A stretch of DNA of 46,802 nucleotides from Octopus bimaculoides (Eukaryota): NCBI RefSeq assembly GCF_001194135.2, contig NC_068999.1, positions 36,011,924-36,058,725 on the forward strand, read 5' to 3'. The notes below the pieces were generated by a model. The model saw only the letters and a program-made list of their open reading frames with translations. It was not told the origin of the DNA and made no database searches. Within the stretch, counting starts at the first letter, position 1. The number at the start of each line of letters is the position of its first letter. The position numbers and the translations under genes were made by a program. This document shows, in pieces, positions 12,385 through 13,620 of this stretch.

Positions 12385-13242
12385 ACCAAGAGTAATATCA
12401 AATTTATTGTTCAATTGACATTTTAAACCTTTGTAGATTGTTCTAGAAAACGGATGATGAATTTTGAAACATGTATATTGAGACAGTCGAATATTTTGGG
12501 ATACCAAATAAAAATTCTTCTCCGAGAATCTCTGGTACATCTGTGCACATGTTCAACAAATACAAAAGTGCATAACACCACATACCTGATCTCAGTTTAT
12601 TGCACATTTATTGTCCATGTGTCTGTTTCTAACTGAACTTAAAACGCGTCTGCAGCAATGAAAACAGTTTATAATTTGGTTTTTATTTATCAACAAACAT
12701 AATCTAATTATCCGCGGTAAGGTACTCGTTGGGCAAATTGAGGAGCATATATGAAACTACTGCAGCTCAGTTTGTGTAATACTTGTGCTAAATTCATATT
12801 GAACCACATGCCGAAAATCTGTTCATGAAGTCAAGAGTGTGTAATGAAATACATGCAATCATTCATTCGCATCTCAGTTTCATTGATGTTGTTGACGATT
12901 GTAGAGAGATCGTCAACAGCATGCTTCAGTGTATGTAGAGATTTTCAACCCGGAGTCGTTCAGGAACGATGTGAGACGTGATCACACATTTTAAATGGAC
13001 TGCACAGTAAAGTAGGTTAAATATTGCCGATTAAATTACAATAAAGGATTGAAACAACCAAAACACATACATTGAGCATGTGCAGTCGATAATGTTTAGG
13101 GCACTAGCACTGCTTTAAATTCGTAATTGAATTTAATCTTACGTATGCTTCGTCACGGCATACCAGCAAATGGTCCTTACTCTATTTGTATATAGTCATA
13201 GATTGGCAGTACGGTTAATACCCTGGTTCGATTCAGGGACGC

Positions 13243-13285
13243 GATGTTGATAAGGCACAAAAATGGCGAAATATTGGTATCCATC
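13243..13285 (+). ncRNA. Type I hammerhead ribozyme motif (U3-A8 variant), predicted cleavage after C13281
   Basis: Stem I GAUG/CAUC; core UUGAUAA; stem II GGCA-CAAAAA-UGGC (one G-G mismatch); GAA; stem III AUA-UUGG-UAU; cleavage triplet AUC. Confidence 0.7.
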
Positions 13286-13584
13286 AATTGTGGATAAGAC
13301 TGGTGAGCGAGTTGTTTTACCTATCTATGATTTTCAGGTGCTTCAACACCCAGTGCTACGAGGGAGTCGTCCTCAGAGCGTTGTAACGCAGCGAAACGGT
13401 GAACAAGCACAACCTATATTGAGTATGTGCGGTTGATAATGTTTACAACACTAGCTCTGCTTTTAATTCATAATTGAATTTAATCTTGAGGATGCATCGT
13501 CGTGGTATACCAATAAATAGTTCTTGGACTATATATAGTCATGGACTGGCGAATCAAATCGTCCCCGATGAGATTCAGGCACGT

Positions 13585-13620
13585 GATGCTGATGAACCAC
13601 GAAAATGGCAAAAAAGGTCT
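13585..13620 (+). ncRNA. Degenerate hammerhead motif, second copy of family 1
   Basis: GAUG-CUGAUGA-ACCA-CGAAAA-UGGC with canonical 5' core; G12 is lost and the 3' half is decayed. Confidence 0.55.

What the first reader, a model, noticed from the sequence alone, without database searches (positions are those of the whole stretch)
13071..13620. Retrozyme-like tandem repeat family 1: ~345-nt monomer bounded by type I hammerheads
Seen: a direct repeat of ~1.6 units, roughly three-quarters identical by eye, with no ORF. Each unit has GAUG-(C/U)UGAU(G/A)A-stem II-UGGC. Copy 1 completes the fold with GAA, stem III AUA/UAU, AUC and CAUC. Combining the copies gives stem II GCCA/UGGC and a bulged stem I extension (CAC-G-UGAUG with CAUCA-AUU-GUG). 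The hammerhead cores are 342 nt apart. Established: tandem repeats with type I hammerheads (newt satellite 2, schistosome Sm-alpha, metazoan non-LTR retrozymes) self-cleave into monomers that can circularise and are thought to be copied by other elements' RT. Inference: this is a cephalopod retrozyme family or a Penelope terminal repeat. I do not know of a description of this family, but could not search.
Basis: partly seen in the sequence, partly recalled or inferred. Interest (0 to 1): 0.85.

Follow-up and report, generated by a model that had tools for sequence, protein, structure and literature searches.

The report
Decayed hammerhead retrozyme tandem repeat
A 561-base stretch made of 1.6 copies of a ~347-base unit carries the worn remains of a self-cutting hammerhead RNA motif. 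It is most likely a dead insertion of a small 'retrozyme' mobile element, a kind already known in many animals.

Summary
The sequence facts hold. Positions 13053-13613 (+) are a 1.6-unit direct tandem repeat with a period of 343-347 nt and 74-79% identity. It has no ORF over 60 aa and 43% GC.

Copy 1 holds a complete, compact type I hammerhead at 13238-13292, with the cut predicted after C13281. Its core is UUGAUAA, the published natural U3-A8 covariant of C3-G8. Copy 2 has the canonical CUGAUGA 342 nt downstream, but it has G12A and the repeat ends before helix III. The locus therefore has one cleavage site, not two.

Rfam gives only sub-threshold HH9 hits (17 and 13 bits; cut-off 52). A strict descriptor finds this site alone in the whole window, against 0.0007-0.05 expected by chance.

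The only other short-range direct repeat in the window (34774-35421, period 348, unrelated sequence) also holds a degenerate hammerhead-like motif.

Best reading: a fossil partial dimer of a non-LTR retrozyme, now probably inactive. The hammerhead fold scores +0.9 kcal/mol against an MFE of -11. A Penelope terminal repeat is not supported, because no RT or GIY-YIG remnant lies nearby.

Copy number, family consensus, host identity and cleavage could not be tested, because no related genome was reachable. It is a new member of a known kind, of modest interest.

The parts
13053..13411 (+). Repeat unit 1 (full unit, ~347-359 nt depending on where the left edge is placed)
   Evidence: blastn self-match 13053-13271 vs 13402-13613. 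The repeat finder spacing 347. GC 0.43.
13412..13613 (+). Repeat unit 2, truncated (about 0.6 unit). It ends inside the hammerhead, about 10 nt before the position equivalent to the cleavage site.
   Evidence: No significant homology of 13610-13790 to the rest of unit 1 (p=0.72).
13238..13292 (+). Complete type I hammerhead-like motif of copy 1. Helix I is 13243-46/13282-85, with a possible distal extension 13238-40/13290-92. The core is UUGAUAA at 13247-53 (U3...A8). Helix II is 13254-57/13264-67 with a G-G mismatch and loop CAAAAA. GAAA is at 13268-71. Helix III is AUA/UAU at 13271-73/13278-80 with loop UUGG.
   Evidence: Sequence. Rfam HH9 17.0 bits, E=0.39 in 901 nt. Sole hit of the strict descriptor in the window.
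13281..13282 (+). Predicted self-cleavage site (after C17 = C13281)
   Evidence: Position follows from the hammerhead numbering applied. Not tested experimentally.
13580..13613 (+). Remnant of the copy 2 hammerhead. The helix I 5' strand is CAC-G-UGAUG, the core is the canonical CUGAUGA at 13589-95, and helix II is ACCA/CGAAAA/UGGC. G12 is replaced by A (13610). There is no helix III, no cleavage site and no helix I 3' strand.
   Evidence: Sequence. Rfam HH9 13.2 bits, E=6.5.
13278..13296 (+). Competing hairpin UAUCCAU/GUGGAUA that sequesters helix III, the cleavage site and the helix I 3' strand in the present copy
   Evidence: RNAfold MFE structures.

Best explanation
This is a fossil insertion of a small non-autonomous retroelement of the metazoan 'non-LTR retrozyme' kind. 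It is a partial dimer (1.6 units) of a ~347-nt non-coding unit that carried one type I hammerhead per unit.

Inferred life cycle of the ancestral element, taken from the published family and not shown here:
1. Multimeric transcripts self-cleave after C17 of each hammerhead.
2. [quoted passage not shown]
3. A host tRNA ligase (RtcB type) circularises them.
4. The reverse transcriptase of an autonomous element, with Penelope-like elements the leading candidate, copies the circle or multimer into tandem cDNA that integrates.

Shown here: the tandem structure, the hammerhead motif and its statistical support, and the decay.

Inferred here: since insertion the two copies have drifted about 13% each without visible constraint. 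The locus now has one damaged ribozyme (copy 1) and one truncated dead one (copy 2). It can no longer release a monomer and is probably catalytically inert.
For: (1) The tandem repeat has a period of 343-347 nt, 74-79% identity, no ORF and 43% GC. This lies within the published 150-450 bp and <50% GC range. Mussel units are ~350-390 bp.

(2) The hammerhead is credible.
- It is the only strict-descriptor hit in the window, against 0.0007-0.049 expected.
- The chance of copy 1's motif is 3e-5 per 347-nt unit, and of the two-copy composite 1.2e-4.
- The best Rfam model at both homologous sites is a hammerhead (HH9, 17.0 and 13.2 bits). Rescaled by me to one clan of about 5 models over the whole window, that is E of about 0.02.
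- Loop 2, CAAAAA, is identical to the HH9 consensus loop (alignment).

(3) The architecture matches the published 'canonical metazoan type I' description: helix II of 4 bp, a short helix III with a tetraloop, and helix I with an internal loop.

(4) The two copies differ at core positions 3 and 8 in a compensating way (C3-G8 vs U3-A8). This covariation is documented in natural hammerheads of Schistosoma PLEs, with ~1,300 hits (PMC4209133).

(5) Copy 2's helix I 5' strand pairs better with copy 1's 3' strand than copy 1's own does (U-A and C-G instead of CxA and GxG). The two helix II variants are each one step from GCCA/UGGC. This is as expected if both descend from an intact ribozyme.

(6) Independent context: the only other direct repeat with spacing <1 kb in the window (34774-35421, period 348, 80-82% identity) has no sequence similarity to this one. 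It too carries a hammerhead-like motif on the + strand, with a 6-bp helix I, GAAA and the palindrome ACCAUGGU before C17. The null for its composite is 4e-4 per unit.

(7) The insertion contains an uncut unit junction and does not start at the cleavage site. This fits copying from a circle or multimer.
Against: - Rfam scores are far below the gathering score (17 vs 52 bits), and nothing passes at curated thresholds.
- My descriptors were fixed after seeing the site. A loose descriptor (any two core mismatches) gives 19 hits against 13.6 expected, which is no signal.
- Only one locus is available. There is no other copy in 46.8 kb, and no family consensus, copy number or covariation across members could be obtained.
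- The hammerhead region is no better conserved between the copies (34/42 positions, about 81%) than the rest of the repeat (79% over the first 126 nt). There is no sign of selection after duplication.
- The hammerhead fold is not the predicted fold. It scores +0.9 vs -11.0 kcal/mol for copy 1, and -3.2 vs -13.3 even for the composite.
- The circular monomer is not notably self-paired (z=-1.1), unlike published retrozyme circRNAs.
- The presence of an autonomous PLE partner and the host identity are unverified. The one RT fragment in the window (26337-26957, minus strand) is of undetermined clade.
Confidence: 0.7

Rival explanations
1. This is a plain local tandem duplication (slippage or unequal exchange) of ordinary non-coding DNA. 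It happens to contain a hammerhead-like string, with no ribozyme ancestry and no mobility.
For: - It is a single locus with no other copy in the window.
- Rfam scores are sub-threshold.
- Loose hammerhead descriptors hit at chance level.
- The hammerhead fold is thermodynamically disfavoured.
- The hammerhead region is not more conserved than its surroundings.
Against: - The strict motif is expected 0.0007-0.05 times per window, yet it falls inside one of only two short-range direct repeats, which together cover about 3% of the window.
- The other such repeat, of the same period, also has a hammerhead-like motif.
- The C3-G8/U3-A8 difference between the copies is compensatory.
- Loop 2 equals the HH9 consensus.
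Confidence: 0.17
2. This is a fragment of a Penelope-like element: tandem pseudo-LTRs (pLTRs) with their hammerhead, left after loss or truncation of the RT-endonuclease ORF.
For: - PLE pLTRs carry type I hammerheads and insert as partial tandems.
- A 2026 preprint finds non-LTR retrozymes phylogenetically nested with PLE pLTRs.
- U3-A8 cores were first described in PLEs.
Against: - No RVT or GIY-YIG signal appears in any of six frames of 11700-16499.
- The two copies abut with no internal ORF.
- Metazoan PLE hammerheads are described as 'minimal', with helix II of 6-8 bp and little or no helix III. This one has a 4-bp helix II and a 3-bp capped helix III.
- The window's only RT fragment is 13 kb away on the other strand.
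Confidence: 0.08
3. The locus is still functional. It would be either a live retrozyme source locus or a co-opted ribozyme that cuts a host transcript, for example within an intron as the amniote HH9/HH10 ribozymes do.
For: - Copy 1 keeps every core position in an allowed state (U3-A8), plus GAAA, a 3-bp helix III and C17.
- A weak CEP76_N-like ORF ending in a GT donor lies about 130 nt upstream on the same strand (E=0.006). The repeat could therefore be intronic and transcribed.
Against: - There is a G-G mismatch in the 4-bp helix II and two mismatches in distal helix I.
- The hammerhead fold scores +0.9 kcal/mol against a -11 kcal/mol competitor hairpin over the cleavage site.
- There is only one cleavage site, so no monomer can be released.
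- About 25% divergence between the copies indicates neutral decay.
- The CEP76 hit is below Pfam's cut-off, and a padded search found no matching protein.
Confidence: 0.05

Closest known systems
Metazoan non-LTR retrozymes (Cervera & de la Pena 2020, PMC7229834), e.g. the Mytilus galloprovincialis ~350-390 bp and axolotl 330/350 bp repeats
   Same: Short non-coding tandem unit (347 nt), GC <50%, and no LTR, PBS, PPT or ORF. One type I hammerhead per unit, with a 4-bp helix II and a short capped helix III. Partial-multimer insertion.
   Different: Only 1.6 units, and a single locus is known. Both ribozymes are damaged. The monomer is not predicted to be highly self-paired (z=-1.1). Expression, circularity and copy number are unknown. 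The core of copy 1 is U3-A8.
Minimal hammerheads in Penelope-like element terminal repeats (Cervera & de la Pena 2014, PMC4209133)
   Same: Type I topology, a U3-A8 core covariant and a tandem or partial-tandem genomic arrangement. They are the probable evolutionary source or partner of retrozymes.
   Different: PLE motifs have a long helix II (6-8 bp), a short helix I and essentially no helix III, and they flank an RT-GIY-YIG ORF. None of this is seen here.
Schistosome Sm-alpha / Sj-alpha SINE-like hammerhead repeats and newt satellite 2 (from my own knowledge and as summarised)
   Same: Units of ~330-350 nt with a type I hammerhead whose loop 2 is CAAAUA/CAAAAA-like, and multimeric transcripts cut to unit length.
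   Different: Those are high-copy families or long arrays with proven cleavage. Here there is no array, no proof of cleavage, and only a B-box-like hairpin in copy 1 (13221-13239) with no A box and no tRNA call.
Rfam Hammerhead_HH9 (RF02275)
   Same: It is the best-scoring Rfam model at both copies, with an identical loop 2 (CAAAAA) and the same helix order.
   Different: The score is 17 bits against a gathering score of 52. HH9 is a conserved single-copy amniote intronic ribozyme, not a repeat.

Membership tests
Metazoan non-LTR retrozyme | Type I hammerhead motif with conserved catalytic core in each unit | tested here: met
   Copy 1 has the full motif with the published U3-A8 core variant. 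It is the sole strict-descriptor hit in the window, against 0.0007-0.049 expected. Copy 2 has the canonical CUGAUGA but G12A and a truncation. The motif is present but degraded, and Rfam scores are sub-threshold.
Metazoan non-LTR retrozyme | Head-to-tail tandem repeat of a 150-450 bp unit | tested here: met
   Period 343-347 nt, 1.6 units, 74-79% identity.
Metazoan non-LTR retrozyme | Low GC (<50%), non-coding, no LTR/PBS/PPT | tested here: met
   GC 0.43. Longest ORFs are 57-60 aa and not conserved between the copies. No Pfam domain in six frames.
Metazoan non-LTR retrozyme | Multi-copy family dispersed or arrayed through the genome | tested here: inconclusive
   There is no other copy in the 46.8 kb window.
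Metazoan non-LTR retrozyme | Monomer RNA folds into a highly self-paired structure | tested here: not met
   The circular fold of the 347-nt unit gives z=-1.1 against dinucleotide shuffles, with 60% of bases paired. Decay of a fossil copy could explain this.
Metazoan non-LTR retrozyme | Self-cleavage and accumulation as unit-length linear and circular RNA | not testable with these tools
   Needs in vitro transcription and RNA data. In silico the hammerhead fold is disfavoured (+0.9 vs -11.0 kcal/mol).
Metazoan non-LTR retrozyme | Co-occurrence with autonomous Penelope-like elements in the same genome | tested here: inconclusive
   One RVT_1 fragment lies at 26337-26957 (minus strand), of undetermined clade, with no endonuclease domain found. 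The host is unidentified.
Penelope-like element terminal repeat (pLTR) | Repeats flank, or adjoin a remnant of, an RT + GIY-YIG ORF | tested here: not met
   No RVT or GIY-YIG hit in six frames of 11700-16499. The copies are directly adjacent.
Penelope-like element terminal repeat (pLTR) | 'Minimal' hammerhead: long helix II (6-8 bp), helix III absent or 1 bp | tested here: not met
   Helix II is 4 bp with a 6-nt loop. Helix III is 3 bp with a 4-nt loop (definition).
Rfam hammerhead clan CL00010 (HH9 / Hammerhead_1) | Score at or above the curated gathering threshold | tested here: not met
   17.0 and 13.2 bits against 52. Zero gathering-level hits in the window.
Sm-alpha/Sj-alpha-type SINE-like hammerhead element | Internal Pol III A and B boxes / tRNA-related head | tested here: inconclusive
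   GGTTCGATTCA (13225-13235, within hairpin 13221-13239) resembles a B box in copy 1 only. No A box was seen, and ARAGORN and Rfam tRNA find nothing.

The most novel reading that the evidence does not exclude
The host genome harbours living, undescribed retrozyme families, at least two of them with unrelated sequences but the same 347-348-nt unit length. One of them uses a U3-A8 hammerhead core. The shared length would then point to a size constraint set by the mobilising machinery or by circRNA biogenesis. These two loci would be old insertions of families that still make abundant circRNAs.
Probability: 0.15. Interest if true: 0.45.

Novelty: new member of a known kind. Interest (0 to 1): 0.3.

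Why it matters
Hammerhead-bearing tandem repeats are a recognised but patchily catalogued class of animal mobile elements and a ribozyme-based route to circular RNAs.

Two families in one 47-kb window would suggest they are common in that genome and missing from its repeat annotation.

This particular locus is a dead copy. Its value is as a pointer to a family, not as a functional element.

Tried and rejected
- Rfam at gathering thresholds over the whole window gave no hits. At E<=10 over the whole window only microsatellite-driven miRNA false positives appeared.
- A loose hammerhead descriptor (any two core mismatches, long loops) gave 19 hits against 13.6 expected. It was uninformative and was replaced by strict descriptors.
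- I looked for further copies in several ways.
  - blastn of the unit against the window found none.
  - Exact look-up of the two longest ORFs of the repeat found them not on record.
  - A 17-mer scan of metagenome contigs gave more than 120 hits, all chance, with no extended homology.
- I tried to reach the source genome or a relative through proteins.
  - The RT fragment had a best hit of 54% identity, and the fetched contig L001 shares no repeats with the window.
  - An X-padded CEP76-like exon query found nothing.
  - A SINE-derived peptide gave one 543-nt metagenome contig.
- The Penelope hypothesis was tested by six-frame Pfam of 11700-16499. No RT or GIY-YIG was found, only a Tc1/mariner DDE_3 relic and a weak CEP76_N hit.
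- I tested for homology of copy 2 beyond 13613, including a second ATGGC at 13626. It was not significant.
- I tested for distant homology between the two tandem-repeat families, both by local alignment and by global alignment anchored at the cleavage sites. None was found.
- A V_ATPase_I Pfam hit at 46399-46764 turned out to be a low-complexity artefact.
- A candidate target-site duplication, TAAAGGA (13042-48 and 13631-37), was rejected as too short to mean anything.

Full report
**Observation.** A direct repeat is found by three methods.
- The repeat finder gives 13065-13190 vs 13412-13537 at 79% with spacing 347, and 13189-13207 vs 13532-13550 at 89% with spacing 343.
- MAFFT gives 75% mean column identity.
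- blastn gives 13053-13271 vs 13402-13613 at 74% over 219 nt, E=7e-31.

The element is therefore 13053-13613, or 561 nt: one full unit of ~347 nt plus about 0.6 of a second. Nothing after 13613 resembles the rest of unit 1 (p=0.72). The longest ORFs are 57 and 60 aa, and they are not shared between the copies. GC is 0.43.

**The hammerhead.** Copy 1 can be written as a complete type I hammerhead:
- helix I G13243-G13246 / C13282-C13285;
- core U13247-A13253 = UUGAUAA;
- helix II GGCA/UGGC (13254-57/13264-67) with a G-G mismatch and loop CAAAAA;
- G12-A14 plus A15.1 = GAAA (13268-71);
- helix III AUA/UAU (13271-73/13278-80) with loop UUGG;
- C17 = C13281, with the cut predicted between 13281 and 13282.

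Copy 2 has the canonical CUGAUGA at 13589-95, exactly 342 nt downstream, and helix II ACCA/CGAAAA/UGGC. It has A where G12 should be, and the repeat ends there. So it has no helix III, no cleavage site and no 3' strand of helix I. 'Monomer bounded by hammerheads' is thus an overstatement. The locus has one cleavage site and cannot release a unit.

**Is it more than chance?** Rfam at curated thresholds finds nothing in the window. With permissive settings on 901 nt, the best hits at the two homologous sites are both Hammerhead_HH9: 17.0 bits (E=0.39) and 13.2 bits (E=6.5), against a gathering score of 52. Those E-values are for 4227 families. Rescaled by me to the roughly 5 hammerhead models over the whole window, the first corresponds to about 0.02.

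A loose descriptor of my own (any two core mismatches, long loops) gave 19 hits against 13.6 in shuffles, which is no signal. A strict one required:
- an exact core, allowing either C3-G8 or the published U3-A8 pair;
- GAAA;
- helix II >=3 of 4 pairs;
- helix III of 3 bp;
- helix I of 4 bp.

This strict descriptor finds this site and no other on either strand. Markov shuffles of the window give 0.0007 hits with compact loops and 0.049 with loops up to 40/30 nt. These descriptors were fixed after I had seen the site, so the figures are optimistic. Even so, the most generous figure, combined with the motif's location inside a tandem repeat, makes chance unlikely.

**Details that fit an ancestral ribozyme.**
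- The two copies differ at core positions 3 and 8 in a compensating way (C-G vs U-A). Cervera and de la Pena reported exactly this covariation in natural hammerheads of Schistosoma PLEs, with about 1,300 hits (PMC4209133).
- Copy 2's helix I 5' strand (CAC-G-UGAUG) pairs better with copy 1's 3' strand (CAUCA-AUU-GUG) than copy 1's own 5' strand does.
- The two helix II variants are each one substitution from GCCA/UGGC.
- Loop 2 (CAAAAA) equals the HH9 consensus loop.
- The overall design matches the published description of canonical metazoan type I hammerheads: helix II of 4 bp, a short capped helix III, and helix I interrupted by an internal loop.

**Details that argue the locus is dead.**
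- The hammerhead fold of present copy 1 scores +0.9 kcal/mol against an MFE of -11.0. The MFE structure includes a hairpin (13278-13296) that buries the cleavage site.
- Even the composite sequence prefers another fold (-13.3 vs -3.2 kcal/mol). Nearest-neighbour energies ignore the tertiary contacts that stabilise natural hammerheads, so this point is weaker.
- The hammerhead stretch is no better conserved between the copies (34/42) than the rest of the repeat.
- The copies differ by about 25%, a Jukes-Cantor distance of about 0.30, or about 0.15 per copy. This looks like long neutral decay.
- The circularised monomer is not unusually structured (z=-1.1), whereas published retrozyme circRNAs are 'highly self-paired'.

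**Context.** A self-comparison of the window shows only two direct repeats with spacing under 1 kb: this one, and 34774-35068 vs 35122-35421 (80% identity, period 348). The second has no detectable similarity to the first. It nevertheless carries a hammerhead-like motif on the same strand:
- a 6-bp helix I (CCUGUG/CGCAGG);
- core CCGAUGA in one copy and ACGAUAA in the other;
- GAAA;
- the perfect palindrome ACCAUGGU (the dimer-type helix III) before C17.

Both copies have C at U4, and helix II is poor. A composite passes a one-core-mismatch descriptor whose null rate is 4e-4 per unit. Two unrelated ~347-nt tandem repeats, each with a hammerhead relic, is what a genome colonised by retrozymes would look like.

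I found no Penelope coding remnant near the finding. Six-frame Pfam of 11700-16499 shows only a Tc1/mariner DDE_3 relic on the minus strand and a weak CEP76_N-like ORF at 12846-12941. The window's one RT fragment (26337-26957, minus strand; RVT_1 2e-11) is 13 kb away and of unknown clade.

**Comparison with what is known.** Non-LTR retrozymes are defined as low-GC tandem repeats of 150-450 bp with a type I hammerhead. They have no LTR, PBS or PPT. [quoted passage not shown] A 2026 preprint places them as non-autonomous derivatives of PLE terminal repeats.

The present element meets the structural criteria: unit size, tandem arrangement, GC content, non-coding status and hammerhead type. It fails the self-pairing criterion. 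It cannot be tested for copy number, expression or cleavage. It does not meet the pLTR criteria, because there is no adjacent ORF and the hammerhead is not the 'minimal' type.

**What I could not do.** No eukaryotic genome collection was searchable by DNA.
- Exact look-ups of the repeat's ORFs found nothing.
- The 17-mer scan of metagenome contigs found only chance hits.
- Protein searches with the RT fragment (best hit 54% identity) and a padded CEP76-like exon showed that neither the source genome nor a close relative is in the collections.
- A SINE-derived peptide gave one 543-nt metagenome contig.

The SINE-like repeats in the window look cephalopod-like to me, but only from memory. In the paper library I found no description of hammerheads or retrozymes in cephalopods. 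A recent Octopus vulgaris repeat annotation lists PLEs but no ribozyme-bearing repeats.

**Verdict.** The Penelope-terminal-repeat half is not supported. This is a new member of a known kind, of modest interest, and mainly a pointer to run a genome-wide family search.

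Noticed in passing
window 34774-35421 (+): A second tandem direct repeat: 34774-35068 vs 35122-35421, 80-82% identity, period 348, with no similarity to the first. It has a degenerate hammerhead-like motif at 34817-34861 and 35165-35209, made of a 6-bp helix I, core CCGAUGA/ACGAUAA (C at U4 in both), GAAA, and the palindrome ACCAUGGU before C17. 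There is no Rfam hammerhead hit at E<=10. It abuts a (CA)n microsatellite at 35422-35520.
   Followed up: partly
window 13610-13622: The repeat's 3' edge (~13613) lies within about 10 nt of the position equivalent to the hammerhead cleavage site (13623). This might mean the template RNA ended at the self-cleaved 3' end. The alignment there is too degenerate to decide.
   Followed up: partly
window 13221-13239 (+): A tRNA T-arm-like hairpin, CCUGG-UUCGAU-UCAGG, containing a near-consensus Pol III B box (GGTTCGATTCA). It lies just upstream of the copy 1 hammerhead and is not conserved in copy 2. No A box was seen, and ARAGORN makes no tRNA call.
   Followed up: partly
window 12825-12930 (+): A short ORF, MKSRVCNEIHAIIHSHLSFIDVVDDCREIVNSMLQ, followed by GTATGT. 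It gives a weak Pfam CEP76_N hit (E=0.006, below cut-off). It may be a first coding exon, which would place the repeat in an intron in the sense orientation. A padded protein search found no match.
   Followed up: partly
window 13773-13937 (+), 2069-2220 (-), 39884-40029 (-), 7226-7290: Four copies (72-86% identity) of a ~160-nt SINE-like repeat. A peptide translated from it matches a 543-nt metagenome contig (ERZ23499442) at 75%.
   Followed up: partly
window 35583-35879: A 298-nt near-perfect palindrome (90% self-complementary), MITE-like or foldback-like. It causes spurious plant-miRNA Rfam hits (MIR841, 84 bits).
   Followed up: no
window 15925-16082/16507-16682; 19045-19260/19506-19716; 29500-29823/30035-30373; 42190-42381/42627-42817: Four inverted-repeat pairs with arms of 160-345 nt (78-89% identity) separated by a few hundred bases. 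The first pair lies next to a Tc1/mariner DDE_3 transposase relic on the minus strand (~15.7-16.5 kb).
   Followed up: no
window 26337-26957 (-): An intact 206-aa ORF that is a reverse-transcriptase fragment (Pfam RVT_1, 2e-11). Its closest database relatives are only 53-54% identical. No endonuclease domain was found nearby, so it is undecided whether it is LINE-type or Penelope-type.
   Followed up: partly
window 7420-38689 (13 runs): Thirteen runs of N (10-928 nt) show that the window comes from a gapped draft scaffold. About 5.6 kb of the window is unknown sequence, often next to microsatellites.
   Followed up: no
window 46399-46764 (+): A 121-aa ORF with Pfam V_ATPase_I and other membrane-protein hits is a translation of (GTA)n/(AAT)n microsatellites (poly-V, poly-N). 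The hits are low-complexity artefacts.
   Followed up: yes
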